DNA from: Phallusia mammillata
Lineage: Eukaryota
DNA: 64,000 bases
Direction of reading: 5' to 3'
Assembly (NCBI GenBank): GCA_965637545.1
Contig: OZ281495.1
Span: 4,526,001 to 4,590,000 of the forward strand
Shown piece after piece: positions 1 to 45,116 of the stretch. The position numbers were made by a program, and so were the translations under genes. The notes under the pieces were generated by a model. It was given only the letters and a program-made list of their open reading frames with translations. It did no database searches and was not told the origin of the DNA. Position 1 is the stretch's first letter. The number at the start of each line of letters is the position of its first letter.

Positions 1-1394
1 GAATTTGATCCATCTGGATAATTATCTTGATATTGACACTTAAGTAGTATGGTACCCTTTTCCAATGTGGTATTTGGTGAACCAAATGTCCCATTGGTTG
101 AGAGACTTGCAGTTGGAGCTGATGAATTGGTTGCGTTGGGTAATAAAAGAAAAATATAAACAATGCTACAATCAATAAGTATTGAGCTAGCATTCACAAT
201 ATCTTGATTGTTGTTACAAAGTGCAAAACGCGCTGCAGATGCAGTGTTTCCAAAAATTGCAACAAACCAACAATCTTACCCGACCAATATTTCACCATAT
301 TTTCAACATCCCATTGAGCCGTTGACAAACAAATTGTGTTAGTGTTAGTGGCTGGGTTTCCATCGTGACTAAACAAACTACCTCCGTTTGAACAAGTAAA
401 CTCTCCTTGTGCATTATAAAAACCATTTGGGGCCAACACAGATACATTATGATCCAACTTTCGTTGACAATCTAAAACAACCAATGATAAATGAAGTTAC
501 AGTGAAGCAATTACCCTCTTGTCGTAGTTTACAAACTTATTGTTGCGAAGTTTATTTGTCAACCAAAATTCCAAATTTTCTGCATAAGAATGACACATTT
601 ATACCTAATATAGTGACTCTTCAGTTCAAGGCCTATTTTAAGCAGGAAAGAGTACCTTTGACTATAATATTCCTTACAGCTTGATATGTATAAGAGGTAT
701 TCAATTCAACAATGCTGTTATTCAATGTAAAACTTCTCGGTGACGTTACACCAAATGTCGTGTTAACACAAGTTCCGTTCCATTCAAGTGTTGTATATAA
801 TCCAGATGTGTTAAATGAACCAACATCGTACTTCGGTGGATCGCAAGCTTTGCCACACCAAAAATGAACCGCTTGGTCGGTGGAACCGTTATTGAAACAA
901 ACCGTCCATTGCAAATCAGGTAGAGTTTCTCCGTTCACAATACATGTACTGTACCGATACATCGTTCCATTGTAGTTTGTCGCCCAAGTTGTTTGATTTG
1001 GATACAAAACATCTGCAGTAAACGTTGTAATAAATTTACTGCACTATATGTTTTTTTGCTAGCTAGACGATAGGACTTTTAATTCCCCAAAAAAACATTG
1101 TTGGTGAAACAATTCCATTTTCTTGACTAAAAGCGCCAAATCTTTAAAGCATTAATTTGGTCCACCAACCAATCAGCGTATATTCTGCAATGTTTATTAT
1201 TTGCAAAAATATACCAATACAATAGACTAATTCTTCTTAATGCGTGGTCGTGAAAACTATTTAACTATTAATATAAACTTTGCAGGAAGTTTTGAACAAT
1301 AAGTCCTACCTCGTGTGTCGCTTTGACTTGTGGATGTGTTAACCCAAAAACCAAAATACCACAAACAAACAACAATAGAACGAAACATTATCAT
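1..1394 (-). CDS. Receptor copy A, 5' part: signal peptide, Ig-like D1, sushi/CCP, start of second Ig-like domain; runs off the left edge
   Basis: Exons (minus) 1394-1310 (MIMFRSIVVCLWYFGFWVNTSTSQSDTR, signal-like), 1012-656 (357 nt, C..LPDLQW Ig pattern), 471-280 (192 nt, C..NG..GEFTC..C..W CCP pattern) and 118-1 (open to the edge). All have GT/AG sites in phase 1, with lengths identical to copy D. Confidence 0.85.
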
Positions 1395-5596: not shown

Positions 5597-8500
5597 TTAC
5601 TGGTCATACACTTCATAGGTTGTGTCTGTTGGTCCCTCTCTGTCATTATCTGTGCATGACAAATTAACTACTTTTTAACAGGTATTTCGGTTGAATATTG
5701 CAACTCAGCACTAACCATTTGAAGAGCGAAAGTCAGCAGTAGAATGGTCAACCTTCATTTCTTCGAAAAATAAAAAAAAAGTTTAATGAGTATACGGAAA
5801 ACATTATGGATATTTGTGTATTGACAACGAAAGAAATGCTACACCAACCTCAATTTCGATTCGCACTATTTGATTGTCTTCTTTAAAGATCTTAACACTT
5901 TCTCCACTTACCCGTCATGAGGAAAACATTCCTAGGCAGAAGAATTAATAACAGTCCAAACAATTCTATTAAAGCAATAGCACCCACGACACTAACAGCA
6001 ATAATAAGTGCTTGGTTTTCATTTCCATCACATATTTCGGATTCCATAATAATGGTAAACATCACAACAAGATCAGTAAATCCCTCAATTGGAGATTTAA
6101 TACGTAACTGGTAAGTTTCAACAGCTGCAAATGTCTTAAAAAGGTATATCAGTTGCGAACAATGATAATTAGAAAAAAAAAACTTACCTCAATTACAAAA
6201 ACAAACGTTTGGTTTGTGCTATCGTTGCGGTCAGCTGTTAAAGAACAACCACGACAAACCACAATTTCATCTACAAAAATGGCAATAAACAATAAGCACA
6301 CTTACATTACGGTGCTTGAATTTTGAATAAATGTTACCGTCTTTGGTCAACGTGTATTGAAATGAAGGGGGGTTGGAAGTAAACCTTACAAAACAACTTC
6401 CATTGACCACCTCATCCGATTGACAAGTTGTGTGACTGTTGATTTTTTCAGGTGAATCTGTCAAATACTTACATTTTAGTAATATTATTCAAATGCATTG
6501 AGATAAATAAATTGTAAATTTCATTAAAAAAGTATATTTTATTGAAAGTTACAGTACATGTTTAGCACCACCGACTTACATGTAACGTTTAAAAAGTATG
6601 TGCTTGTAAAATTTCCAAAAGCATCGCTTGTTAGGCAAATATAGTTTCCAAGGTCTTTTTTGGTCACATTATTCAAATTTAAAACGTTATTAAATTTGTC
6701 TATACCCCGCGTCTGGTCAGAAATTTGCCACTGAAATTTTGTGTCGAGTTCAATTGAATAGTCGATCGAGCAACTTAATGAGACATTTTCTCCGGCTTTT
6801 GTGGGTGTGTTGTTCACAACAAGCCCAGTAATGTAGGGTGCCCCTGAACAAAAACCAATTAATAATTTAACAAATCTACAAACAAAACATGAAACTCAAT
6901 ACTAAAACCTCCGGAACGTTTGTGGCAAACGTCATAAAAACTTACTAACGGTAACAACTGTGACATTAAGTTGCGAAACATCGCTACCAGCAATGTTACT
7001 TGAATTGCATGAAACTGATGCAGATTCTCCAAAACTGTGAGACAAAACACAAGAACTCTTGTTATGAATTATCTTTCCGATTTGAAATTTACAAATAGCA
7101 GGTGGATTTGCTTCTTTCAAACAGTTTAATGTCACTGTTTGTTCACCATCAAGAAAAACACCAAATTCATTTTCAATCGATAAATTACTAGATGTAATAT
7201 ATATCTTATTATGAATAGGTGGATCTGCAATAAATGTTGGTTGTTTTAGTTGTTTATGTTTCATTACGCATGAAAGCCAAAACCTACAAAAGACGTCAAG
7301 AAAAATCGTGCTCTGTAACATGTCGAATTTGTCTTCTGTCTGACATGTGTAGTTCCTTGTGTCAAACTTTTCTCAAGAATTGCTACTGTTCTTTTCTTTT
7401 TTCCCATTGAAAAGCCAATAACAGTTCGCAGGAGGATTTGCTTCATTTAAGCAATAAAATGTGACAATCTGTTCAGAGTTTAAAAGAATCACTTCACCCG
7501 ATGTTATTAGATTTGGTGATGCAAGATATGAGAGTTGTACATTATGTGGAGGATCTGTATAGCGTAAAGCATACATATTAAACTATGTAAATCTGTAGCA
7601 CAAATCTTACTTACACTGTTCATTCAGAATTGGAACGTTTGATTTTCCAAGTGTGTCGTCAAACTCCGTGTATGATGCGACATTCCTGTGCTTGAATGTT
7701 GGAGTAAACGGTACTCCTAGAGTCTATACAAATGTTTAAAAAATATCAAAACGCTATATTTCTAAACCTTCCGAAAAACGACTATACCAACGTTAAATAA
7801 ACATCACTAATATACACACTCGATTCCTGTCATCTTAAACCTCCTGGAATCAAACACCGTTAAACTAATAAAGCGACTGATCAAAAAACGAAACATCATA
7901 AACTTGAACAGTTTTTCCAATTATTGTATATATTGAGTATAACTTGCCTTGGAAACATTGTTATGGAGAATTGTACCAAAGTAATATCTAGAATTTGACC
8001 CATTTGGATATTGATTTTGATATTGACACTTAAGTAGTATGGTGCGATTTTCTGGTTTGGTATATGATGAACCAACAGTTCTATTGATTGAGACACTTGC
8101 AGTTGGAGCTGTATGTTTGTGTGGTTAATTGATTGCGTTCAGTAATAAAAGAAGCAGCAAAATAAGAACACTGCTACAATCAATATGTATTGAGCTAGCA
8201 TTTACAATATCTGGATTGTGGTTACAAACTGCAAAACGCGCTGCAGATACAGTGTTTCCAAAAATGCAACAAACCAACCAATCTTACCCGACCAATATTC
8301 CACTATATTTTCAACATCCCATTGAGCCGTTGACAAACACTTTGTGTTAGTGTTAGTGGCTGGGTTTCCATCGATAGTGAACAAACTTCCTTCGCTTGAA
8401 CAAGTAAACTCTCCTTGTGTGTTATAGAAACCATTTGGGGCCAACACAGATACATTATGATCCAACGTTCGTTGACAATCTAAAACAACCAATGATAAAT

Positions 8501-9334
8501 GAAGTTACAGTGAAGCAAATACCCTCTTGTCGTAGTTTTGAAACTAACTGTTGCAAAGTTTATTTGTCAACCGAAATTCGAAATTTTCTGCATAAGAATG
8601 ACACATTTGTACTTAATATAGTGACTCTTCAGTTCAAGGCCTATCAATTCAACAATGCTGTTATTCAATGAAAAACTTCTCGGTGACGTTACACCAAATG
8701 TCGTGTTAACACAAGTTCCGTTCCATTCAAGTGTTGTATATAATCCAGATGTGTTAAATGAACCAACATCGTACTTCGGTGGATCGCAAGCTTTGCCACA
8801 CCAAAAATAAACCGCTTGGTCGGTGGAACCGTTATTGAACCAAACCGTCCATTGCAAATCAGGTAGAGTTTCTCCGCTCACATTGCATGTACTATACCAA
8901 TACATCGTTCCATTGTAGTTTGTCGCCCAAGTTGTTTGATTTGGATACAAAACATCTGCAGTAAACGTTGTAATAAATTTACTGCACTATATGTTTTTTT
9001 ACTAGCTAGACGACTTTTAATTAAAAAAAAAAAACATTGTTGATGAAACAATTCCACTTTCTTGACCAAAAGCGCCAAATCTTTAAAGCATTAATTTAGT
9101 CCACCAACCAATCAGCATATATTCTGCAATGTTTTAAATTTGCAAAAATATATAAAATACAATGGACTAGTTTTTCTTAATCCGTGGTCCTGAAGACTAT
9201 TTAACTATTAATATAAACCTTGCAGAAAGTTTTGAACAATAACTCCTACCTCGTGTGTCGCTTTGACTTGTGGATGTGTTAACCCAAAAACAAAAACACC
9301 ACAAACAAACAACTAATGAACGAAACATTGTCAT
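5597..9334 (-). pseudogene. Receptor copy B, probably pseudogene (or truncated secreted product)
   Basis: Exons 9334-9250, 8955-(donor lost), 8479-8288, 8108-7948, 7723-7615, 7554-7373 (stop), 7224-6946, 6843-6580, 6457-6338, 6270-6188, 6134-5912 (TM) and tail exons to TAA at 5597. Lesions versus A/D: a 65-nt deletion at 8644/8645 removes the exon-2 donor, a 21-nt deletion in exon 5 removes the F-strand Cys, a ~350-nt deletion creates TGA at 7375-7373, and a ~54-nt deletion near 5884 removes the first tail-exon acceptor. Confidence 0.8.
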
Positions 9335-13436: not shown

Positions 13437-16400
13437 TTATTGGTCATACACTTCATAGGTTGTTTCTGTTGGTCCCTCTCTGTCATTATCTGTGCATGAC
13501 AAATTAACTACTTTTTAACAGGTATTTCGGTTGAATATTGCAACTCAGCACTAACCATTTGAAGAGCGAAAGTCAGCAGTAGAATGGTCAACCTTCATTT
13601 CTTCTTCGAAAATAAAAAAAAAGTTTAATGAGTATACGGGAAACATTATGCCTTTTTATGCATTGACAACGAAAAAAATGATACACCAACCTAAATTTCG
13701 ATTCGCACTATTTGATTGTCTTCTTTGAGGACTTAGGTTTGTATCTGCGATAATGAGTTTAATCAAAACACGGTTTTCAAAGATCTTAACACAGTCTCCA
13801 CTTACCTACCTTGAGGAAAACATTCCTAGGCAGAAGAATCAATAACAGTCCAAATAATTCGATTAAAGCAATAGCACCGACGACACTAACAGCAATAATA
13901 AGTGCTTGGTTTTTATTTCCACCACATATTTCGGATTCCATAATAATGGTAAACATCACAACAAGATCAGTAAATCCCTCAATTGGAGATTTAATACGTA
14001 ACTGGTAAGTTTCAACAGCTGCAAATGTCTTAAAAAGGTATATCAGTTGCGAACAATGATAATTAGAAAAAAAAAACTTACCTCAATTACAAAAACAAAC
14101 GTTTGGTTTGTGCTATCGTTGCGGTCAGCTGTTAAAGAACAACCACGACAAACCACAATTTCATCTACAAAAAAGGCAATAAACAATAAGCACACTTACA
14201 TTACGGTGCTTGAATTTTGAATAAATGTTACCATCTTTGTCCAAACAACTTGACCACCTCATCCGATTGACAAGTTGTCTGACTGTTGATTTTTTCAGGT
14301 GAATCTGTCAAATACTTACATTTTAGTAATATTATTCAAATGCAGTGAGATAAATAAATTGTAAATTTCATTAAAAAAGTATATTTTATTGAAAGTTACA
14401 GTACATGTTTAGCACCACCGACTTACATGTGACGTTTAAAAAGTATGTGCTTGTAAAATTTCCAAAAGCATCGCTTGTTAGGCAAATATAGTTTCCAAGG
14501 TCTTTTTTGGTCACATTATTCAAATTTAAAACGTTATTAAATTTGTCTATACCCCGCGTCTGGTCAGAAATTTGCCACTGAAATTTTGTGTCGAGTTCAA
14601 TTGAATAGTCGATCGAGCAACTTAATGAGACATTTTCTCCGGCTTTTGTGGGTGTGTTGTTCACAACAAGCCCAGTAATGTAGGGTGCCCCTGAACAAAA
14701 ACCAATTAATAATTTAACAAATCTACAAACAAAACATGAAACTCAATACTAAAACCTCCGGAACGTTTATGGCAAACGTCATAAAAACTTACTAACGGTA
14801 ACAACTGTGACATTAAGTTGCGAAACATCGCTACCAGCAATGTTACTTGAATTGCATGAAACTGATGCAGATTCTCCAAAACTGTGAGACAAAACACAAG
14901 AACTCTTGTTATGAATTATCTTTCCGATTTGAAATTTACAAATAGCAGGTGGATTTGCTTCTTTCAAACAGTTTAATGTCACTGTTTGTTCACCATCAAG
15001 AAAAACACCAAATTCATTTTCAATCGATAAATTACTAGATGTAATATATATCTTATTATGAATAGGTGGATCTGCAATAAATGTTGGTTGTTTTAGTTGT
15101 TTATGTTTCATTACGCATGAAAGCCAAAACCTACAAAAGACGTCAAGAAAAATCGTGCTCTGTAACATGTCGAATTTGTCTTCTGTCTGACATGTGTAGT
15201 TCCTTGTGTCAAACTTTTCTCAAGAATTGCTACTGTTCTTTTCTTTTTTCCCATTGAAAAGCCAATAACAGTTCGCAGGAGGATTTGCTTCATTTAAGCA
15301 ATAAAATGTGACAATCTGTTCAGAGTTTAAAAGAATCACTTCACCCGATGTTATTAGATTTGTTGATGCAAGATATGAGAGTTGTACATTATGTGGAGGA
15401 TCTGTATAGCGTAAAGCATACATATTAAACTATGTAAATCTGTAGCACAAATCTTACTTACACTGTTCATTCAGAATTGGAACGTTTGATTTTCCAAGTG
15501 TGTCGTCAAACTCCGTGTATGATGCGACATTCCTGTGCTTGAATGTTGGAGTAAACGGTACTCCTAGAGTCTATACAAATGTTTAAAAAATATCAAAACG
15601 CTATATTTCTAAACCTTCCGAAAAACGACTATACCAACGTTAAATAAACATCACTAATATACACACTCGATTCCTGTCATCTTAAACCTCCTGGAATCAA
15701 ACACCGTTAAACTAATAAAGCGACTGATCAAAAAACGAAACACCATAAACTTGAACAGTTTTTCCAATTATTGTATATATTGAGTATAACTTGCCTTGGA
15801 AACATTGTTATGGAGAATTGTACCAAAGTAATATCTAGAATTTGACCCATTTGGATATTGATTTTGATATTGACACTTAAGTAGTATGGTGCGATTTTCT
15901 GGTTTGGTATATGATGAACCAACAGTTCTATTGATTGAGACACTTGCAGTTGGAGCTGTATGTTTGTGTGGTTAATTGATTGCGTTCAGTAATAAAAGAA
16001 GCAGCAAAATAAGAACACTGCTACAATCAATATGTATTGAGCTAGCATTTACAATATCTGGATTGTGGTTACAAACAGCAAAACGCGCTGCAGATACAGT
16101 GTTTCCAAAAATGCAACAAACCAACCAATCTTACCCGACCAATATTCCACTATATTTTCAACATCCCATTGAGCCGTTGACAAACACTTTGTGTTAGTGT
16201 TAGTGGCTGGGTTTCCATCGATAGTGAACAAACTTCCTTCGCTTGAACAAGTAAACTCTCCTTGTGTGTTATAGAAACCATTTGGGGCCAACATAGATAC
16301 ATTATGATCCAACGTTCGTTGACAATCTAAAACAACCAATGATAAATGAAGTTACAGTGAAGCAAATACCATCTTGTCGTAGTTTTGAAACTAACTGTTG

Positions 16401-17179
16401 CAAAGTTTATTTGTCAACCGAAATTCGAAATTTTCTGCATAAGAATGACACATTTGTACTTAATATAGTGACTCTTCAGTTCAAGGCCTATCAATTCAAC
16501 AATGCTGTTATTCAATGAAAAACTTCTCGGTGACGTTACACCAAATGTCGTGTTAACACAAGTTCCGTTCCATTCAAGTGTTGTATATAATCCAGATGTG
16601 TTAAATGAACCAACATCGTACTTCGGTGGATCGCAAGCTTTGCCACACCAAAAATAAACCGCTTGGTCGGTGGAACCGTTATTGAACCAAACCGTCCATT
16701 GCAAATCAGGTAGAGTTTCTCCGCTCACATTGCATGTACTATACCAATACATCGTTCCATTGTAGTTTGTCGCCCAAGTTGTTTGATTTGGATACAACAC
16801 ATCTGCAGTAAACGTTGTAATAAATTTACTGCACTATATGTTTTTTTACTAGCTAGACGACTTTTAATTAAAAAAAAAACATTGTTGATGAAACAATTCC
16901 ATTTTCTTGACCAAAAGCGCCAAATCTTTAAAGCATTAATTTAGTCCACCAACCAATCAGCATATATTCTGCAATGTTTTAAATTTGCAAAAATATATAA
17001 AATACAATAGACTAGTTTTTCTTAATCCGTGGTCCTGAAGACTATTTAACTATTAATATAAACCTTGCAGAAAGTTTTGAACAATAACTCCTACCTCGTG
17101 TGTCGCTTTGACTTGTGGATGTGTTAACCCAAAAACAAAAACACCACAAACAAACAACTAATGAACGAAACATTGTCAT
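13437..17179 (-). pseudogene. Receptor copy C, probably pseudogene
   Basis: Near-identical to B over exons 1-8, with the same lesions: donor deletion at 16491/16492, exon-5 deletion and TGA at 15222-15220. A private deletion shrinks exon 9 to 73 nt (14304-14232, versus 120 nt), causing a frameshift. ATG at 17179, terminal TAA at 13437. Confidence 0.8.
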
Positions 17180-21232: not shown

Positions 21233-24200
21233 TTATTGGTCATACACTTCATAGGTTGTGTCTGTTGGTCCCTCTCTGTCATTATCTGTGCATGACAAAT
21301 TAACTACTTTTAACAGGTATTTCGGTTGAAATATTGCAACTCAGCACTAACCATTTGAAGAGCTAAAGTCAGCAGTAGAATGGTCAACCTTCATTTCTTC
21401 GAAAAATAAAAAAACAGTTTAATGAGTATACGGAAAACATTATGGTTATTTGTGTATTGACAACGAAAGAAATGCTACACCAACCTAAATTTCGATTCGC
21501 ACTATTTGATTGTCTTCTTTGAGGACTTACTTTTGTGTCTGCGATAATGAGTTTAATCAAAACAGTTTTCAAAGATCTTAACACAGTCTCCACTTACCCG
21601 TCTTGAGGAAAACATTCCTAGGCAGAAGAATCAATAACAGTCCAAATAATTCGATTAAAGCAATAGCACCCACGACACTAACAGCAATAATAAGTGCTTG
21701 GTTTTTATTTCCACCACATATTTCGGATTCCATTATAATGGTAAACATCACAACAAGATCAGTAAATCCCTCAATTGGAGATTTAATACTTAATTGGTAA
21801 GTTTCAATAGCTGCCAATGTCTTAAAAAATATTTCGGTTGCAAACAATGATAATTGAGAAAAAAAAACTTACCTCAATTACAAAAACAAATGTTTGGTTC
21901 GTGCTATCGTTGCGGTCAGCTGTTAAAGAACAACCACGACAAACCACAATTTCATCTACAAAAAAGGCAATAAACAATAAGAACACTTACATTACGGTGC
22001 TTGAATTTTGAATAAATGTTACCGTCTTTGGTCAACATATATTGAAATGAAGGGGGGTTGGAAGTAAACCTTACAAAACAACTTCCATTGACCACCTCAT
22101 CCGATTGACAAGTTGTGTGACTGTTGATTTTTTCAGGTGAATCTGTAAAGTACTTACGTTTAAGTTATATTATTCAAATACATTGAGTTAATAAATTCTA
22201 AATTTCATTAAAAAAGTGCATTTAATTGAAAGTTGCAGTAACTGTTTAGCACCACCGACTTACATGTGACGTTTAAAAAGTATGTGCTTCTAAAATTTCC
22301 AAAAGCATCGCTTGTGTGGCAAATATAGTTTCCAAGGTCTTTTTTGGTCAAATTATTCAAATTTAAAGCGTTATTAAATTTGTCCATATCCCGCGTCGGG
22401 TCAGGAATTTGCCACTGAAATTTTGTGTCGAGTTCAATTGAATAGTCGATCGAGCAACTTAATGAGACATTTTCTCCGGCTTTTGTGGGTGTGTTGTTCA
22501 CAACAGGCCCAGTAATGTAGGGTGCCCCTGAACAAAAACCAATTAATAATTTAACAAATCTACAAACAAAACATGAAACTCAATATTAAAACCTCCGGAA
22601 CGTTTATTGCAAACGTCATAAAAACTTACTAACGGTAACAACTGTGACATTAAGTTGCGAAACATCGCTACCAGCAATGTTACTTGAATTGCATGAAACT
22701 GATGCTGATTCTGTAAACTTGTGAGACAAAACACAAGAACTCTCATTATGGATATTATTCCCTATTTGAAATTCACAACTGGCAGGTGGATTTGATTGTC
22801 TTGAACAGTTGAATGTCACTGTTTGTTCACCATCGAGAAAAACACCGAATTCATTTTCAACCGATAAATTACTGGATGTGATATATATCTCATTATGAAT
22901 CGGTGGATCTGCAACAAATGTTGTTTTAGTTTATTATGTGTTTTTTTATGCATGAAAGTCAAAACCTACAAAAGACATCAAGGAAAATCGTGATCTGCAA
23001 AGTGTCGAATTTGTCTACTGTCTGACATGTGTAGTTCCCTGTGTCAAATTTTGAAACGTTGTTTATGTTAAGAACTGGTTTGTTTAAATCTAACCCATGC
23101 ACATTTGTTGTCACATTCCAATGGAACGTTGTATTCAGCTCGTATTGATATTCAACATTGCAATTCAGTATAACATTATCTCCTTGTATAATTGTGTCAC
23201 CTCCAGAATTATCAATATTTACATATCCTATAAAAAAATCCTTGCAAATATTAACATAAATTCAACTTACATAAACAACTCAAATAAATATTTCGTACTG
23301 TTTTCCACGACAAGTAATTCAATCACAGTGGACGTGGCATTTCCTAAACTATTTTCCATAAAACAAGAAATGTTGCTTGAAGACGAAATGACTTCATTAA
23401 TTTGGCAAGAATTGCCACTGTTCTCTTCTTTTTTTCCATTGTGAAGCAAATAACAGTTTGCAGGTGGATTTGCATCATTTGAACAATAGAATGTAACATT
23501 TTGTGCAGAGTTTAAGAGAAACTCTTTGTCCGAACTTATGAAATAGTCTGATAGCATAATTCCCAAATTCGGTTCATATGGAGGATCTGTATACGGGGAA
23601 CAATGCATTTGATGTGTTAAACTAGTTTAATGTTTATTACTTACACTGTACATCCAAAACCGTAACTTGAGATTTGCCCAGTGTGTTATTGTATTTTGTG
23701 TACGGCGTAACAGCTTGGCACGAAATTTTAAAATTGTTATTCTCGCGTGTTGGGGTGAATTGCTTTGTTGTGTTCTGTAAAACCGTTATTATTGCTTTGT
23801 TTTTGAATTTATTTAAAAACTGTTTCAAAAGTTTTTTTTAATCTAAAGAAGTACCTGCCTAGCTTTAAAACCAAACCGCAAACTGAAACAAATAGCCAAT
23901 AATCCGCTGGTAATTATCTTAGCGTCTTGTTAATGGTTACCTTTAAACTTTCCTCCAAAAATGTGCCGAAATAATAGTTTGAACTCAATCCGATTGGATA
24001 AACATCTTCGTATTGGCACTTAGGCAGTAAAGTAGTGTTTTCTGTTGTGGTATATGATAAACCAACCGATCCATTGATGGAAAGTTTCACAATTGGAGCT
24101 GTACAAAAATTGTAATTTAGAAAAAAAGTATTACCAAAGTTTGTTTAAAATCACTGAAAATCTACATAACGTTGGAAAGACGGCATTAATGACACAAACT

Positions 24201-25575
24201 TACCCGCCCAACATTCCATGTTATTTTCATCTTCCCACTGAGAAGTTGACAAACACTTTGTGGTAGCGGTAATGGCTGGGTTTCCATCGTTAGTAAACAA
24301 ACTTCCTCCGTTTGAACAAGTAAACTCTCCTTGTGTGTTATAAAAACCATTTAGTGCCAACACAGATACATTGAAGTCTAACGCTTGTTGACAATCTGAA
24401 ACAATAACCAATGATAAATGAAGTTAGTGAAGCAATAAACTCTTGTCGTGAAACTTATTGTTGCAAAGTTTATTTGTCAACCAAAATTCAAAATTTTCTG
24501 TATAAGAATGGCACATTTATACTTATTATAGTGACTCTTCAGTTCAAGGCCTATTTTAAGCAGGAAAGAGTACCTTTAGCTGTAATATTCCTTACAGCTT
24601 CATATGTATAAGAGGTATTTAAATCAACAATGCTGTTATTCAATGTAAAACTTCTGGGTGACGTTACACCAAATGTTGTGTTAACACAAGTTCCGTTCCA
24701 TTCAAGTGTTGTACATAATCCGGGTGTAATAAAAGCACCAGCAATATACTGCGGTGGGTCGCAAAGTATGTCACACCATATATGAACGACTTGGTCGAAG
24801 GAACCGTCATTGAACCAAACTGTCCATTGCAATGTGGGTGGACTTTTTCCACTTACATAACATGTACTGTACCAATACATTGTTCCATTGTAGTTTGTCG
24901 CCCAAGTTGTTTGACTTGGATACAAAACATCTGCAGTAAAGTTGATATTAATTTACTGCTAATTTACAGCTGAAATATTTTGCTTAAAATTGATTACAAA
25001 GCTTTTTGCATTCGCTTTTACACACGTTCATTGAAAAAAAAAACTGACAATTTTTAGCATGACATCTAAAGGTACCAATCTTCTGACCCACCATAGTATT
25101 GACGTAATGCTTTTGCAATCAATTCAGCATATATCCTGCAATGTTAATAACTTGCAAATATATATTTCGAATACATTTGACTAGTGCTTTTCGCCTTTGT
25201 TCGTGACCCAAAACTAGGCCCCCGTTTAATTTGGTTGGTTCGTCGGTTAAACTAGTGGGGGCATTTTGTTGCATGTTCAATAGGCGTTTCTGATTTGCGA
25301 ATTAGGACAGAATAGTTCTATGACATTGCAAAACTTGGATTTTAAAAATTGGCAAATTGGTTCGCTATAAACTTTCGCTTTGCTGCCCAAAGAGGTGTGG
25401 CATTAGCCAAAATAAATCACTGTAATAAGTGTGAAAGTATTTGACTACTATTACAAACTTTGCAGAGAGTTATGAACAAACACTTCCTACCTTGTGTGTC
25501 TCTTTGACTTGTGGCTGTGACGAAGCAAAAATAAAAACACCACAAACAAACAACGAATGAACGAAACATTATCAT
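21233..25575 (-). CDS. Receptor copy D, intact type I membrane protein (~776 aa): SP - Ig D1 - CCP - five Ig-like domains - TM with Glu - ~58-aa tail ending TTYEVYDQ
   Basis: 14 exons: 25575-25491, 24930-24574, 24395-24204, 24098-23941, 23774-23645, 23586-23299, 22908-22630, 22527-22264, 22142-22023, 21955-21873, 21820-21598, 21538-21485, 21396-21352, 21285-21233. All are GT-AG, the phases join and there is no internal stop (2331 nt). Ig motifs include C..ANPPA.C and W..D.G.Y.C. TM is ALIIAVSVVGAIALIELFGLLLILL. AATAAA overlaps the stop. The three tail exons are less certain than the extracellular ones. Confidence 0.85.
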
Positions 25576-26429
25576 GAGTCAACTTGCTGCCGTGTTCTTT
25601 GTGTTCGATCTGATTCTCACTCGCTCAGAACTGGCTGACTAGACCAGACCAAACACTGTGTTGCTAATTAACCGGATTTTTTCCTGTATTCACCTAATCT
25701 GTGCGAACCCTGGTGCCAGTTTTTTGTTTGTTTTTTTGTTGGAACAACGTGAACTCGTGTATTAACTGCAGGCTTGAGGACATAATAGTTTGATCTTTTT
25801 GCTTCGCGAAACATTTTTGGAATACTTAATTGTAAAATCAAGTCAACTATCAACATCACATCAGTGAATAAAGGCTTAATGTAAATGTATGCACGAAAGC
25901 CTACTTTTTGCTAGATATAACATTAGATATGAATGAAACGATACAAAATTGAAAGGTGTCGACCCATTTGATGGTGTGCTTGAAACCCATTAACACAGTT
26001 TTGCGATAATTGATAGATTTATGCTGTAAATAAAAAAGTTGTGAAAACGATTCATAAATTGTTTGTTACGTAGGTAGGTAAATACACTTTCACAAAATAA
26101 GTTTCTTGATCTTCTGTTCCCGTTTAACGGATACTTTGCCCGAAAGCGAAAGTACAAGTCCGAAATTAGATCCAAACCACATATTGATAAGCCAGAGAGT
26201 TCAAAAGCTAGATTTATCAACTGAAAAGCGTGTCCCAAAGTGTCCGAGTGCAAAGTCAGGCCCCAAACACATCCGTTTTCCGAATTAAACCCAAAGCAGA
26301 AAAGTGATTCCCGCATTACAATTTATGTTCCTTTTCGACTTAAAAGTTTCCATAAAACAGGTTAAATCCCCTCCTCTGGTTAAAAGACATTTTAAATATT
26401 TTACTTTTTTCCCATATGTTGTAGAGAAT

Positions 26430-38874: not shown

Positions 38875-41800
38875 TCAGATGTTTGTTGAATCTGTTAAAT
38901 GAAAACGTTATCTGTAATACTAACAAATACACAAAAGCAGTAACTTACCTTTTGCTACAAGATTCGGTTTCTTCTTTATTGGAGGTTTAGATTTTTTTAT
39001 GCTGGGACCAGCTTCTGTTTTACCTAAAGTTGAACGAACATTTTATTCGCAGTAAGCGTAATGTCATACAAGACTACGAAAACCAGTCTGTGTAACAGGA
39101 TGATTCTGTTTGAGTAATCCAGAAACTGACGATGCCCTAATAGGCGAAATTAATATTTCTGTTTTGTAAATAAACGACGTCACTAATGTTGAAGGTTTTC
39201 CGCCGTATTTTATACACATTTTAAGTGTAACTTGCTTAACCAACATAAACTATGTTTTCTCACCGGTTGGTTTTGCCTTGTTTACTTGAGCATAAACATC
39301 TCCACTGGATGTGGGGCAGCTGCTATATTCTGAAATTTACGTGACGCTGCTTTAAGTGCAAAAAAACAAATTTTATAGCGATAACAAGTAGAGGTTATAA
39401 AGAAAAATTGAAAATTCATATTTTTTACTTAAGTTCGAAAAACATATAGTTTGTACTCAATGCAATGTATGTTACCATTCATACTTGCTTAAAGTATTTG
39501 TTAACTTTTGCAACAGACCTTTCATGGGGAAATCCTGTGGCGTAATTACGTGCAAAGGAATCCCAGTTGGTTGGTGAAAGTTGTACAAGGGATTCAGTTT
39601 TTCGTCTTTTTCAACTAAAAAGCATAATGAAAAGTGTAAAAGTAATTGACAATACAAACATTTAAACTAAAAAAAATGTTGTTAGAACGTAAATAGAGAC
39701 AATTATATTTTTGGATGAACTATTTTACTTTTTGTCTTTTTTGATTTGTCCACTTCAGCATAAACTTCATTTCCTGATGTTGCTGAACGTGATTCGTATA
39801 GTGAATTGACAGGTTCTTCTTTAACTAATCATAACGACAGAATTTACTGTTACGCACTTTAAGTTTTACATTAAACCTAACTATAGTCAATCGTTTCAAA
39901 AAAAGTGTTTTAATCATTAAGATTATTTTTTTTGTAAAAATTTCGTACATATTACAGATGATGCCATCAGGTGTTTTGTTTGACCAATTCGTGCTCAATT
40001 TCGTCCGACCAAACCAGGCTTTTTGAAATAAGTGTTGTGCGGTCCTCTAAGACGCTTTGAATTTAAAAGAAGTGTGATGCGATTTTTGTACAAAGCTAGG
40101 GACAATACTAGTGTTTTGATAAGCAATCAAGTAAAGTTCATTTATTCCAAAAAAAGGTTTCAGTAGTTGCATATTTAACTTGCCTTTCTGCTTTTTCTTG
40201 ATGTCAACTTGTGCGTACGTATCTCCAATCGTCACAGAGCGTTGTGGTGCATCTATTTGTAATCAAACTCAATCAACGGAGCTTGTTTACTTAACAGAAT
40301 AAAGCTTTGACCAACGAAGCACACCGAAAAACTTTTTAACAATTAAGTCCAATGGACCTTAACTCGTAAGTTTAGTCGATGTTGCACAAAAGTTTGTAAG
40401 AACTATAACTTAAGTGCTCGTTGTAAAGTAACTTATATTACAGATTACTTGCTTAATAGTCAACTTACCGTTAACAACTTTGCAATCTGAGCGTGGTGGG
40501 TTTATTCGTTCCTCGTTTTTAGAGCGTTGCACTTGTGTAAAGAACGTGTGTTAATATGCAAGGTATTGCAAAGAAAAAAATATGTCAAAAGTATTTTCTC
40601 TTACCAACAGCGTATGCATCAGTCGCTTCATCTGGGTCGCCACTGGTATCGTAAAGTGGATTGATTCTTTCTTCTTTTACACTACCTAAAACAAAAAAGC
40701 CAAATGAGTTTGGGGCTGGTTTGCTACAAAGAATGAGTATATATGCCATTTATTCGAATTGAATGAGTATCAGCTTATTCATCGTATGGCCCTGCACGTA
40801 AATATTATATTAACGAAGCAAAGCAAATTTGCTTACTAGCTCAAACATAAGTTTCAATTTTTTGTACACTACTTTGCAAATGCCCACCTAAGTCCGTATT
40901 TTCGTGATCAGATTGTCTTTTATCACTACCGGAATTTTCACCTTGGAATGTAAATAAATTTAGAAACAAAGATCAACTGGTACAGTATGTCAAAATAAAC
41001 TTACTGGATTTATTCAAATAATTTCTTCTCAAGAAAAACACCGCCACCAACACAATAACAATAAAAGCAATTGCACCCACTATACTTCCAGCGATTATGG
41101 CTGTTTGATTTCCGTTTCCATAAGGTACGTTGCTTTCCCTGGATATTGCAAACTCAACAACTAGATCATTAAATTCTTCCATTGGTGATTTAATTCTTAA
41201 CTGATATGTTTCTGTTTCAGAGAAAATCTAAAAAATGCAAACTTGCAGATATCTAAATACAGAAAATAACAACACACAGAATTTACCTCTATCATCAATA
41301 AAAATGTTTGCTTTGTGCTGTCCTTATTATCAGTTGTCAGGGAACAATTAAGGCAAAGCACGATACGACCTCAAAAAATGTCAATAAATATAAACCAAGC
41401 GAATTACAAAGAAAATAAAACTTGACTGACCATTATTTGTCAAAGTGTATTGAAACGAAGGTGGATTGGAGGTAAACGTAACAAAGCAATTTCCATTTAC
41501 CACTTCATCTGATTGACAGTTCGCGTTACTACTTATTTCCTGTGGAGAATCTGAAAAGTATTTTCACACAACATTTTTACGGGTCAAAAATTAATTAAAT
41601 AAAAGCAACTCACAAGTCACATTTAAAAAATGTCGACTGGTGTAATTTCCAAAAACATCACTTGTTTTGCAAACATAGTTTCCCAAATCCAATCTGGTCA
41701 AATTAGTCAAAATCAAAACATCATTTAATTTATCTATCACTCTCGTCTTATCAGGAATTTGCCACTGATACTTTGTATCGAGTTCAACAGAATAATTAAC

Positions 41801-44800
41801 GAAGCAAATTAGAGCAACAGTTTCGCCGGCTTTTATGGGTGCCTGGTTTACATCAGGTTCTGCAACTTGCGATGATCCTGCAAAATAGTTTGATGCTTTA
41901 CATGCTAAATCAAAATGAAAGCTACAGTAATTCACACTTACTATCTTTAACAACTGTAACATTAAGTTGTGAAAAGCCGCTGCCAGCAATATTACTTGCA
42001 TTGCATGAAACCAATACTGTATCTGTAAAGATGTGAGACAATACACAAGAATTTCCATATTGAATAAATGCGTCAATTTTAAATTCGCAACTGGGAGGGG
42101 GATTTGCGTCTCTTGAACAGTTTAGTGTAGCTGTCTGTTCACCATCAAGTAAAACACCATATTCATTTACAACTGATGAATTACTTGACGTCACAACAAT
42201 CTTGTCAAGAATTGGGGAATCTAAAAATATTTCCAAAAATAGTGGTTTGCCAAGTAAAATCTTTCATAACAAATAGAAACTGATGTAAGTGGTGTTTTAT
42301 AGAAGCAGTCTTCAGTTTGGTATATATAGTACAAGCTTTGAAAATTACAAGCTTTTTAAAACACTAACAAGCTTTGAAATAATAATAGTCTTTATAACTG
42401 AATTATCAGATAATAGTTTAAACAATTTTTTGTTGTTACATTCCATTGGAAGAATATATTGATTTCACAACGTTTAGTAATGTATTTGTCAAGATGCGCA
42501 AAATATTTGTTTTTATAATAACCGAACGCAAAATATATTATATTAAACTTACACTGCACGTTGAGCAAAGTTTCCGGTGAACGACCAAGTGCGGTATTGT
42601 ATTCCGTGTATGGAGTCACAGCTTGGCATGATACATTGAGATTGTTGTCTTCGCGTGTTGTATTAAAATAGACAGAAATAGCCTGAGGACAACAGTCAAA
42701 CAAGTAATTGGAAACGTTTGTAGAAGTGAACATCGTATAGCAACAATACGTTTGTTATTGAAAAGATAAACTTTGTTTGTGGTCTTTTTTTCGCAAACAA
42801 TGCTTTTATTGATATTTACTTGATGTATAAGTTCCTTTATTATTTTTATTATTTTTATCACAGTAGAGTGCCGATTTAGTTTTGCACAATTCAATGTAAC
42901 TCAACCATATAGTATTTTAAGTTATTTGTTTGCATTTTTTGCAAACCTGGGTTTGTTTGCAGCCAGTCTAGCACTTACTTTTGAAACATTGCGATAAACG
43001 TTTGTTCCTTTATAATAAACTGTATTTAATCCAACTGGGTATTCATCAGTGTACTGGCAATCGAATGTTAATATTTGATTTTCGTTGACCGTAAGTGTAG
43101 TGCTTGAATTTTCGTTGATTAACAGAGTTGGGCATGGCGCTTTAAAAACAAGATTAAATAGTATTCGTCCGTTACGCGTCAATGTTTCAATAAAGCCTAC
43201 CTAACCAACATTCAACTGTACTTTCCGACTCCCATTGGGCAGTTGACAAACATACTGTATTATTGCCAGGGAACGGTGTTAATTTGTTTGCGAACAATCT
43301 TCCATTGTTTAAGCAATTAAATTGTCCTTCTGTGTCGAAATATCCATTCTTAGAACTAACCGACACATTGAAATTGACCACTTTTTTGCATTCTTAAAAA
43401 AAAACGTTAATTTTTACCCCCTCGGTAATTGGTATGATAGTATTGATATGTTTTGTCCGTTTTTCATTTCACTTTGTCTGAACATAAATTATATGGTCTT
43501 AAAGAGATTCATACTTACGATGTGTTTAATTATGATTCATTCAGATTTTATCATTTTTACTGCTTTTTTGTAATGCAGATTGGTGTCGTTTTGTGTTTTC
43601 CTAAAATCAGTGACTTCAGCCAGTCGCATGTGTGTTTGGGAAAGGTTTCACCGCCAAATTTAACCAGCAAAATATTTATGCAAGTTTACGTACAATTTAT
43701 TAGATTGCAACAAGATTACAAGGGTGCTAGCAATTTGCCAGGTGTATGAGAGCAGAACAAATGTTTTCCAGACAGACCTGCAATTTTTGCTTAACATTTG
43801 TGCCCGGAATCAATATTGAGTAGCTTCCTAATTTCCAGAATTTTTGCGTCCAGTGGACTACAGCGCTTTTTAAAGTACACGAAACTGCTGTCACAAGGTG
43901 ATTTAAACAAAGGGGCAAACATCTCATCACGTTATTACTCAATACCAAGAGTTTGGTTTCTTCTGTTTCGGTAAATATGGATGTGTAAAGAGGTTTACGT
44001 GCTTCCCTTGTCTCTGCGATCATACACGGGATATGCAGACCAAACAACTCATCAACATGATTTTATGGCTATTTGGAAAACTTTTCATTGATGCTACGAA
44101 ACCTCATAGGAAGGCCAATCGCCAAAAAAATATGTCCAGTCGAACAGAATTCACCAAAACATATTTTAAAATATTTTTTCTACCTGAAAAGAAACAACTC
44201 TGTGATCATACAAGAAACTTTATCTCTATAGTAGTATTTGCATTTTACAAACAAATAGCGTTTGGGTAGTTCATAGCTATGCTATAAAACACAATATGAC
44301 GCCAATTTAGTTTCGCTTAACGTGTCTTCTGAAACTTTTGACAACTTGGATCACTGAGATACGGTAACCCAACGATACAGTATAAACTTTAATATTATAA
44401 TAAATGCATTGGTATTACTTACCTCGCGTGGTAATATTTTTGTACATTTTCGTTGCATTACCTTCTGCAGCCAGCAACGCTTGTCCAGCTTTTTCTGAAT
44501 CAGCAACTGTTAATGAAATGCTGCTGTTGTTCAAAGAAAAATTTGTAGGTAGAGGAACGCCAAACGTTGTATGAATGCAAGATTCATTCCATTGTAATGT
44601 TCCACGAAATTCTGTGAATTGAAATTTGCCATCATTGTACGATGAATTGCCCTTGTTCCAAGTAAAACTAATGGTGTCATTTATGTTGTTGTTCCAAATT
44701 TCCCATTTCAAGTTAGGCAGACGTTGGCCATCAGAGTAACATTTAGAGTACCAGTACATTGTTCCATTGTACTTTTCCGCCCAGATTGTTTGGTGTGGTT

Positions 44801-45116
44801 GTAGTTTGCTGTCTGTAAACATGTATAAAATATACGATAATTGGCAGCAACAAATGATACATTTTCTAAAATTTAGCGATATTAAGCAACAAAAGTGAAA
44901 ACTCTTTACAAAACGACGCAAACTGCAATAAAATACGGTGTTTAGAAACTTAGTATCAAACGGCCATATCTTAAAAACTTCTCTCAATTTTTAAGTTTCC
45001 AATTAAGACCGGAAAAATGTCAAAAAGTAAATACCATCTGCAGCATCCAGCGTAAACAACCAGAGTAGCACACAAATTTTGTACACCATACTTCCCGAAC
45101 GTGTATGAGCTGCCAT
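38875..45116 (-). CDS. Receptor paralog E, intact (~807 aa): SP - Ig D1 - CCP - four Ig-like domains - uncharged TM - long tyrosine-motif tail
   Basis: 17 exons: 45116-45035, 44812-44423, 43392-43201, 43139-42979, 42682-42553, 42220-41942, 41877-41614, 41550-41431, 41369-41287, 41227-41005, 40685-40605, 40252-40184 (GC donor), 39824-39729, 39614-39519, 39329-39264, 39023-38949, 38891-38875. Exon lengths 192/130/279/264/120/83/223 match D exactly. TM is AIIAGSIVGAIAFIVIVLVAVFFL. The 39519 donor and the last exon are tentative. Confidence 0.85.

What the first reader, a model, noticed from the sequence alone, without database searches (positions are those of the whole stretch)
24574..24930. Hypervariable centre of the N-terminal domain between A and D
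Comparing A and D exon 2, 21 of 49 residues differ in the central stretch (IVNGETLPD...SGLY versus YVSGKSPPT...PGLC). The next 29 residues (TTLEW...NNSIV) are identical, and even the following intron start is nearly identical. Exon 4 is likewise much more divergent between A and B than exons 2-3. Focal amino-acid divergence in the membrane-distal domain is the usual signature of a ligand-binding site under diversifying selection or patchwork conversion.
Basis: partly seen in the sequence, partly recalled or inferred. Interest (0 to 1): 0.72.

Follow-up and report, generated by a model that had tools for sequence, protein, structure and literature searches.

The report
Mosaic exon in sea-squirt receptor genes
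Two neighbouring sea-squirt surface-receptor genes differ sharply in the middle of their outermost domain, mainly because the sequence on either side was recently copied between the genes while the middle kept its old divergence; selection for novelty is not shown.

Summary
In exon 2 (D 24574-24930, A 656-1012, minus strand), 21 of 49 central residues differ, the next 29 are identical, and intron 2 is 94% identical. The clustering is beyond chance (0 of 1500 permutations).

Centre dN/dS is 0.52-0.59. Centre dS is 0.48, against 0.08-0.16 in the flanks. The non-synonymous to synonymous ratio is the same in centre and flanks (p 0.47).

The flanks are the outliers, not the centre. Introns 1 and 3 are unalignable between D and A. 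Exons 4-6 are more diverged than the centre (dN 0.31-0.44, dS 0.6 to over 2). A 430-nt low-divergence tract (24289-24716) runs through non-coding intron 2. So this is patchwork gene conversion around an old segment. That segment is also the least constrained part of the domain: against paralog E, dN is 0.79 in the centre and 0.30 in the flanks.

Context:
- B and C are chimeric dead copies.
- A, B and C lack a conserved cysteine in exon 3.
- The exon-2 domain has no detectable relatives in 1.84 billion proteins and no confident fold.
- The layout resembles Botryllus FcoR/Fester receptors, but membership is unproven.
- One individual's D allele carries the paralog codon at residue 48.

The parts
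24574..24930 (-). Exon 2 of gene D (357 nt, phase 1-1). It encodes the 119-residue membrane-distal domain.
   Evidence: Open frame with AG/GT boundaries. An RNA contig of run X8 covers 24604-24932 with 1 difference and leaves the window sequence exactly at the acceptor.
24713..24859 (-). Divergent centre, codons 25-73. This is the old, unconverted and weakly constrained segment.
   Evidence: 74% nt and 57% aa identity to A. dN 0.28, dS 0.48, dN/dS 0.59. No N-glycosylation sequon in D, against 2-3 in A, B, C and E.
24860..24960 (-). Short high-identity tract: the end of intron 1 plus codons 1-24.
   Evidence: 96-98% identity to A, while the rest of intron 1 is 45-79%.
24289..24712 (-). Long low-divergence tract: exon 2 codons 74-119, all of intron 2 (24396-24573) and the first ~105 nt of exon 3.
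   Evidence: Only 20 sites in 360 set D apart from A and B. Intron 2 is 94.3% identical and the 3' flank 94.2%.
24204..24395 (-). Exon 3 of D: a four-cysteine, one-tryptophan module that is sushi/CCP-like by spacing only.
   Evidence: Candidate exon with AG/GT boundaries in phase 1. Alignment A4. No hit in Pfam or PDB, and AF2 pLDDT is 49.
25491..25575 (-). Exon 1 of D (start codon and signal peptide). Its last base completes codon 1 of exon 2.
   Evidence: Sequence and donor G|GTAGGA. Conserved in A, B and C.
656..1012 (-). Exon 2 of gene A, the comparator. It is intact, but two tryptophans that are invariant in the other copies are replaced (W20R, W39C).
8645..8955 (-). Exon 2 remnant of B. 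A 65-nt deletion removed the last 45 coding nt and the splice donor.
16492..16802 (-). Exon 2 remnant of C, with the same 65-nt deletion as B.
44469..44812 (-). Exon 2 of the distant paralog E, 41% identical to D. Flanks are 55-67% identical and the centre 27%.
15136..15399 (-). Hybrid exon of C (B has the same at 7289-7552): the exon-6-type 5' half, an in-frame TGA at the duplication junction, then the exon-7-type 3' end.

Best explanation
Genes A and D are old paralogs in a tandem cluster of lineage-specific immunoglobulin-superfamily receptor genes of an ascidian. Their membrane-distal halves diverged long ago: introns are unalignable and dS ranges from about 0.5 to over 1. More recently, short stretches were copied between the paralogs by interlocus gene conversion or unequal recombination. 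One tract of about 100 nt covers the start of exon 2. One of about 430 nt covers the end of exon 2, all of intron 2 and the start of exon 3. The 147-nt centre lies between the two tracts and kept its old divergence, so it looks hypervariable against its flanks. A second, independent factor adds to this. The centre is the least constrained part of the domain in the whole family, so replacement changes accumulate there about 2.5 times faster than in the flanks. What is shown: the mosaic of divergence, its extension through non-coding DNA, and dN/dS below 1. What is inferred: conversion as the mechanism, its direction, and the idea that the centre forms exposed loops of a beta-sandwich.
For: Regional identity D vs A is 56% at the intron 1 end, 95.8% in the 5' flank, 74.1% in the centre, 94.2% in the 3' flank, 94.3% in intron 2, 83.3% in exon 3 and 49% at the intron 3 start. 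The sliding window shows the same pattern. Centre dS is 0.48, against 0.075 and 0.156 in the flanks, and centre dN/dS is 0.52-0.59. Synonymous differences are 11/31 in the centre against 15/221 at neutral-like sites of the flanks plus intron 2 (p 3.7e-5). The N:S ratio is the same in centre and flanks (p 0.47). Across the gene, dS between D and B runs from 0.03 to over 2, and exons 4-6 have higher dN (0.31-0.44) than the centre. The low-divergence tract 24289-24716 has 20 D-specific sites in 360. Against paralog E, where dS is saturated everywhere, dN is 0.79 in the centre and 0.30-0.32 in the flanks. Exchange seems to continue. In run X1 the D allele differs from the window at only two adjacent bases in 364 nt (24788, 24789), and these turn codon 48 GTC into GCG, the exact codon of A, B and C. 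A contig end of run X6 reads codons 63-70 as a mix of A-type and D-type codons (decoded by me).
Against: Only five copies were available, three of them near-identical, so no site model or formal breakpoint test (GARD, GENECONV) could be run. The synonymous counts are small: 11 against 5 within the exon, p 0.02 without the intron. The flanks are also conserved at protein level in E, so part of their identity reflects purifying selection. Neither the direction nor the donor of the conversion is known. The comparator lineage A/B/C shows signs of decay, which could inflate replacement changes. Further paralogs exist outside the window (loose ends), so the centre could instead have been imported.
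Confidence: 0.62

Rival explanations
1. Diversifying (positive) selection on a ligand-binding surface drives the amino-acid divergence of the centre. The flanks are simply the conserved scaffold.
For: The centre is the fastest-evolving part of the domain at depth: against E, dN is 0.79 in the centre and 0.30 in the flanks. Differences fall in runs and at alternating positions. All three residues inside the C53-C57 mini-loop differ, as do six of the nine residues after C24. N-glycosylation sequons are gained and lost only in the centre. Centre dN/dS of 0.5-0.6 is high for a folded domain. Botryllus FF1 and FcoR7 concentrate allelic variation in the N-terminal domain (PMC12582321).
Against: Pairwise dN/dS is below 1. 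Synonymous divergence is elevated 3- to 6-fold in the same segment. The N:S ratio does not differ between centre and flanks. The high identity of the flanks continues through 178 nt of intron, which protein-level selection cannot explain. Exons 3 and 6 have similar or higher dN/dS of 0.56 and 0.74.
Confidence: 0.15
2. The centre, not the flanks, is the converted part. An exon 2 that was once uniformly similar in A and D received a foreign centre from a third, divergent paralog elsewhere in the genome.
For: Contig ends in runs X1 and X6 show further paralogs. They share the conserved 5' block of the exon but continue with other centres or 3' ends. The X6 variant is a mix of A-type and D-type codons.
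Against: High divergence is the background state of the D head: introns 1 and 3 are unalignable, and exons 4-6 have dS from 0.6 to over 2. It is more economical to treat the two low-divergence tracts as the events. No donor is present in the window; the profile search of all six frames finds only the five copies.
Confidence: 0.15
3. Decay of the comparator. A, B and C are dying genes, and the centre differences are mostly neutral replacements on their lineage.
For: B and C lack the exon 2 donor and carry an in-frame stop at the duplication junction. A, B and C all have Tyr in place of the fourth cysteine of exon 3, which D and E keep. A alone has replaced two tryptophans that are invariant in B, C, D and E. 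A-B dN/dS over exon 2 is 0.8.
Against: Decay would hit flanks and centre alike. It does not explain the elevated synonymous divergence of the centre or the 94% identical intron. A to B/C divergence is only 2-3% in exon 2, far too little to account for 26% in the centre.
Confidence: 0.06

Closest known systems
Botryllus schlosseri fester co-receptors (FcoR) and Fester family (FF), PMC12582321
   Same: Both are ascidian type I membrane proteins in tandem, copy-number-variable multigene clusters. Both have a signal peptide, an N-terminal domain encoded by one exon, a small four-cysteine module, further Ig domains and a single TM. In both, divergence is highest in the ectodomain and especially in the N-terminal domain (against the gene model).
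   Different: No sequence similarity was detectable: the profile search of 1.84 billion proteins returned no ascidian protein. The N-terminal domain could not be shown to be Ig-like, nor exon 3 to be a sushi domain. D has about six modules between exon 3 and the TM, where FcoR has two Ig domains. The host is said to be a solitary ascidian, which has no colony fusion.
Mosaic evolution by interlocus gene conversion in vertebrate immune receptor clusters (KIR, Ly49, MHC class I/II, paired receptors). This comparison rests on my own knowledge.
   Same: Tandem paralogs have patchy identity, with conversion tracts that cross introns. A divergent segment persists in the membrane-distal domain. Dead copies lie beside live ones. 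Paralog-type codons appear as polymorphisms.
   Different: The family is unrelated and the ligand unknown. dN/dS above 1 at contact residues is documented for those families but is not shown here.
Ciona vCRL1 (variable complement-receptor-like 1), cited in PMC6916515
   Same: It is a highly polymorphic ascidian surface receptor said to contain CCP modules (architecture from my own knowledge).
   Different: vCRL1 is a single polymorphic locus built of CCP repeats. Here the variable part is an orphan 119-residue domain, and the variation documented is between paralogs.

Membership tests
Codon region under diversifying selection | dN/dS above 1 in the variable segment | tested here: not met
   Nei-Gojobori dN/dS for codons 25-73 is 0.59 (A-D) and 0.52 (B-D, C-D). 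Against E, dN is 0.79 with dS saturated at 1.4-2.5. No site models were possible with five copies.
Codon region under diversifying selection | Synonymous divergence not elevated in the variable segment relative to its flanks | tested here: not met
   dS is 0.48 in the centre against 0.075 and 0.156 in the flanks. Synonymous differences are 11/31 in the centre against 15/221 at flank synonymous plus intron 2 sites, p 3.7e-5.
Interlocus gene-conversion mosaic | Differences between paralogs significantly clustered along the sequence | tested here: met
   Maximum chi-square 28.1, reached by 0 of 1500 and 1 of 300 permutations.
Interlocus gene-conversion mosaic | The low-divergence tract continues through non-coding DNA while neighbouring non-coding DNA is diverged | tested here: met
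   Intron 2 is 94.3% identical, while the intron 1 end is 56% and the intron 3 start 49%. The tract 24289-24716 has 5.5% D-specific sites.
Interlocus gene-conversion mosaic | Donor and direction identified; phylogenetic incongruence between segments | tested here: inconclusive
   Three-way informative sites show only branch-length heterogeneity and no change of topology. Further paralogs lie outside the window.
Immunoglobulin superfamily receptor | At least one Ig domain above the Pfam threshold, plus a signal peptide and a TM segment | tested here: met
   Exon 9 of D (22264-22527) scores 32.8 bits on PF00047 ig, above the cut-off of 21.8. Other exons give sub-threshold Ig hits. The signal-peptide exon and a TM exon are present.
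Botryllus FcoR / Fester family | N-terminal V-type Ig-like domain | tested here: inconclusive
   Pfam gives no hit and neither does a PDB profile search. The AF2 model has pLDDT 35 and is all-beta. hhalign against the gene's own Ig exons gives probability 1%. A Cys24-Trp36-Cys82 triad is invariant in all five copies, and the only remote hits are bacterial Ig-like repeats with E 1e-5 to 1e-4.
Botryllus FcoR / Fester family | Sushi/CCP domain as the second module | tested here: inconclusive
   D and E have the spacing C-x25-C-x20-C-x5-W-x7-C. Pfam and PDB give nothing meaningful: Pfam 0 families for D's exon 3 and PDB best E about 1. AF2 pLDDT is 49. A, B and C have Tyr in place of the fourth Cys.
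Botryllus FcoR / Fester family | Detectable sequence homology to FF or FcoR proteins | tested here: not met
   A profile HMM of exon 2 searched against 1.84 billion representative proteins gave three weak bacterial hits and no tunicate protein. The word search found nothing. I could not confirm that FF/FcoR sequences are in that library.
Botryllus FcoR / Fester family | Tyrosine-based signalling motifs in the tail; high allelic polymorphism and copy-number variation | not tested
   Tails were not examined here; another first-reader note (s1-349169) reports tyrosine motifs in E. On alleles, X3 is identical to the window, X1 differs by one codon, and no contig of X6 matched the centre at 93% or above.

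The most novel reading that the evidence does not exclude
D is a live receptor gene of an FcoR-like, lineage-specific family in a solitary ascidian. Its membrane-distal domain would be diversified in the population by very short conversion tracts, templated by the dead copies next to it (B, C, perhaps A) and by unlinked paralogs. This would be a germline, pseudogene-templated way of generating receptor alleles. Selection would keep the centre from being homogenised while the scaffold is freely exchanged.
Probability: 0.13. Interest if true: 0.7.

Novelty: new member of a known kind. Interest (0 to 1): 0.33.

Why it matters
The pattern itself is familiar from vertebrate and plant receptor clusters: a divergent patch between converted flanks in a tandem receptor family. 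It is not evidence of adaptive hypervariability here. Two things make the locus worth a further look. First, the domain is an orphan, with no relative found in 1.84 billion proteins and no confident fold, yet it sits on a receptor whose layout parallels the Botryllus allorecognition co-receptors described in 2025. If the two are related, that receptor type would predate coloniality. Second, there are first hints (the codon-48 allele and the X6 mosaic) that paralog-to-paralog exchange creates allelic variants in the centre. Cheap amplicon sequencing could test this.

Tried and rejected
- Relatives of exon 2 (the N-terminal domain): Pfam gave nothing. The word search gave nothing, though it only sees proteins of 65-208 aa. 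The PDB profile search gave nothing.
- Big HMMER profile search: three bacterial repeat proteins with Ig-like or FN3-like domains, E 1e-5 to 1e-4 summed over 3-7 repeats. I treat these as a composition or fold-level echo, not homology.
- AF2 of exon 2 (pLDDT 35) and of exon 3 (pLDDT 49): both too poor for a fold search or for mapping variable residues, so no fold search was run.
- hhalign of the exon 2 profile against the gene's own Ig exons: probability 1%.
- Six-frame profile search of the window for further copies: only the five known.
- Three-way informative sites (A=D, B=D) to find the direction of conversion: no clustering.
- Search for the upstream part of the X8 transcript in the window: no match to the 30-mer at up to 3 mismatches. 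A fuzzy search then found its homologue, the leader exon ending at 25694, 17295, 9450 and 1513.
- Earlier findings by sequence and by words: nothing on this family beyond the notes on this window.
- Literature: no paper on this family in Phallusia.
- Not run: PAML or HyPhy site models, because they are not installed and five copies are too few.
- No N runs in the window.

Full report
**What is there.** The window is AT-rich eukaryotic DNA (about 35% GC) with no N runs. Earlier notes of this scan call the genome an ascidian, most likely Phallusia mammillata; I did not test that. The finding's coordinates, 24574-24930, are a phase 1-1 exon on the minus strand. It has an AG acceptor and a GTACTC donor and encodes 119 residues. 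tblastn and a profile search of all six frames find exactly five copies, all on the minus strand: A 657-1013, B 8645-8956, C 16492-16803, D 24575-24931 and the distant E 44469-44804.

**Gene model of D.** Open frames with AG/GT boundaries in phase 1 give these parts:
- signal-peptide exon 1 at 25491-25575
- exon 2
- exon 3 at 24204-24395, a four-cysteine, one-tryptophan module
- exons 4-5
- four Ig-type exons 6-9
- exon 10
- a TM exon near 21598-21810

Pfam confirms Ig only for the downstream exons; exon 9 scores 32.8 bits on PF00047.

**Transcript evidence.** Run X8 holds a contig that joins a D-like exon 5 to an exon 6 start. The break is at the predicted donor 23645, where the window continues with GTAAGT. 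So X8 is RNA and the model's splice sites are used. Another X8 contig covers exon 2 (24604-24932) with one difference and leaves the genome exactly at the acceptor.

**The observation.**
- Codons 25-73, A against D: 21 of 49 residues and 38 of 147 nt differ.
- Codons 74-102: 0 of 29 residues and 2 of 87 nt differ.
- Codons 1-24: 2 of 24 residues differ.

A two-breakpoint maximum chi-square on the nucleotide differences gives 28.1. It was reached by 1 of 300 and 0 of 1500 permutations. Intron 2 is 94.3% identical over its 178 nt. Exon 4 is indeed more diverged between A and B (64% protein identity) than exon 3 (86%).

**The selection test.** Nei-Gojobori estimates for the centre are dN 0.28, dS 0.48 and ratio 0.59 (A-D), or 0.52 against B and C. 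The flanks have dS 0.075 (5') and 0.156 (3'). Synonymous differences are 11 of 31 sites in the centre, against 15 of 221 neutral-like sites in the flanks plus intron 2 (p 3.7e-5). The ratio of replacement to silent differences is the same in centre (27:11) and flanks (6:5), p 0.47. Both classes of change rise together. That means the centre is older than its flanks; it has not been driven by replacement changes alone.

**Which part is the outlier.** Aligning the whole 5' halves of the genes shows that deep divergence is the rule between D and the A/B/C type:
- Intron 1 is 45-79% identical and intron 3 is about 49%.
- The region 23052-24230 is 40-75% identical.
- By exon, D against B: dS 0.26 (exon 3), 0.99 (exon 4), over 2 (exon 5), 0.59 (exon 6). 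It then drops to 0.24, 0.03, 0.03 and 0.11 in exons 8-11.
- dN in exons 4-6 (0.31-0.44) exceeds that of the exon 2 centre.

Against this background two islands stand out. One of about 100 nt lies at the intron 1/exon 2 boundary (96-98% identical). One of about 430 nt, 24289-24716, has only 20 D-specific sites in 360 and runs through the non-coding intron 2. Protein-level constraint cannot keep an intron 94% identical when its neighbours are unalignable. Recent copying between paralogs can. So the centre is an old segment left between two conversion tracts.

**A second component.** Paralog E is so old that dS is saturated in all segments. Against it, the flanks have dN 0.30-0.32 and the centre 0.79, with protein identity of 55-67% against 27%. 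The centre is therefore the least constrained part of the domain family-wide. Several features change only there:
- E lacks the C53/C57 pair and three residues.
- All three residues between C53 and C57 differ between A and D.
- Six of the nine residues after C24 differ.
- D has no N-glycosylation sequon in the centre, while A has two, B and C three, and E two.

This fits exposed loops on a conserved scaffold. Cys24, Trp36 and Cys82 are invariant in all five copies. It is compatible with some positive selection, but it does not show it.

**History of the array.** The self-comparison gives a 7834-bp unit. Its junction lies at 23052 in D exon 7, matching 15217 in C and 7370 in B. In B and C the corresponding exon is a hybrid. 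It has an exon-6-type 5' half, an in-frame TGA at the junction, then the exon-7-type 3' end. B and C also share a 65-nt deletion that removes the last 45 nt of exon 2 and its donor. They are therefore dead by-products of an unequal duplication that fused an A-type head to a D-type tail. A and D are the original genes. A is cut off by the start of the window. A, B and C all carry Tyr in place of the fourth cysteine of exon 3, which D and E keep. A alone has replaced two tryptophans that are invariant elsewhere. So the comparator lineage may itself be decaying. I confirm that and add the mechanism.

**Hints of ongoing exchange (contig data).**
- Run X3 matches the window exactly and is probably the source of the assembly.
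- Run X1, a different sample, has a D allele that differs at just two adjacent bases in 364 nt (24788 and 24789). They change codon 48 from GTC to GCG, the exact codon of A, B and C.
- A contig end of run X6 reads codons 63-70 as a blend of A-type codons (64, 68), a D-type codon (70) and two new replacements.
- Other loose ends in X1 and X6 show further paralogs that share the conserved 5' block but have other centres.

These are contigs, not reads, and I could not retrieve them. They are leads only.

**What the domain is.**
- Exon 2 has no Pfam hit, no PDB hit and no word-search hit.
- A profile search of 1.84 billion representative proteins gave only three weak bacterial proteins made of Ig-like repeats.
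- AF2 gave an all-beta model with pLDDT 35, too poor to map residues.
- hhalign against the gene's own Ig exons was negative.
- Exon 3 has sushi-like cysteine spacing, but no Pfam or PDB support and pLDDT 49.

The layout is signal peptide, single-exon N-terminal domain, small four-cysteine module, Ig domains, one TM. It parallels the FcoR family, and partly the Fester family, of Botryllus (PMC12582321). There the N-terminal domain was recognised as Ig-like only by structure prediction, and it carries most of the allelic variation. Membership is unproven here, because two defining domains are inconclusive and no sequence homology was found.

**Verdict.** Its main cause is patchwork conversion around an old, weakly constrained segment. 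I did not search or fold the joined spliced protein.

Noticed in passing
7289-7552 and 15136-15399 (junction 7370 / 15217, equal to 23052 in D): B and C are chimeric dead genes. Their hybrid exon joins an exon-6-type 5' half to an exon-7-type 3' end, with an in-frame TGA exactly at the junction of the 7834-bp tandem unit. This shows how the array was built: unequal duplication from mid-gene to mid-gene.
   Followed up: yes
8600-8645 and 16447-16492, compared with 636-701 in A: B and C share a 65-nt deletion that removes the last 45 nt of exon 2 and the splice donor.
   Followed up: yes
281-469, 8289-8477, 16136-16324, compared with 24205-24393 (D) and 43205-43393 (E): The fourth cysteine of the exon 3 module is Tyr in A, B and C but is kept in D and E. 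A alone also has W20R and W39C in exon 2, at tryptophans that are invariant in the other four copies. The A-type lineage may be losing function.
   Followed up: partly
24788-24789: In run X1 the D allele differs from the window only here, across 364 nt. The two adjacent changes turn codon 48 (GTC, Val) into GCG (Ala), the exact codon of A, B and C. This is either a very short conversion tract (under 17 nt between flanking informative sites) or a retained ancestral polymorphism.
   Followed up: partly
25694 (D), 17295 (C), 9450 (B), 1513 (A); X8 contig on 24604-24932: A leader exon ending in AGATTAG, followed by GT, lies upstream of the signal-peptide exon in all four copies. An RNA contig of run X8 joins such a leader directly to exon 2 and skips exon 1. 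In D the leader is open for about 75 codons in phase with exon 2, with ATG codons. In A, B and C the same frame has stops. It could be an alternative N-terminus or a non-productive isoform.
   Followed up: partly
24646, 24746, 24866, 24914 (loose ends of X1 and X6 contigs): Contigs from two other individuals match only the conserved blocks of exon 2 and then continue with different sequence. Decoded by me, one reads codons 23-32 as a fourth variant and another reads codons 63-70 as a mix of A-type and D-type. More paralogs or divergent alleles exist outside this window.
   Followed up: partly
22264-22527 (D exon 9) against 6581-6841 (B): In the almost identical tail halves this Ig exon has 9.5 replacement against 1.5 silent differences (dN/dS 1.7). 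The counts are too small to be significant.
   Followed up: no
24713-24859 against the same columns of A, B, C and E: D has no N-x-S/T sequon in the centre and carries an extra cysteine at residue 73, giving an odd total of five. A has sequons at residues 42 and 68 and an extra cysteine at 39. B and C have three sequons and E two. Sequons in the flanks (15, 79, 98) are conserved.
   Followed up: yes
22970-23586 (D exons 6-7) against E 41615-42215: D has two pairs of alternating Ig-type exons (6/7 and 8/9), where E appears to have one pair. This looks like an internal duplication of a two-domain unit in D.
   Followed up: no
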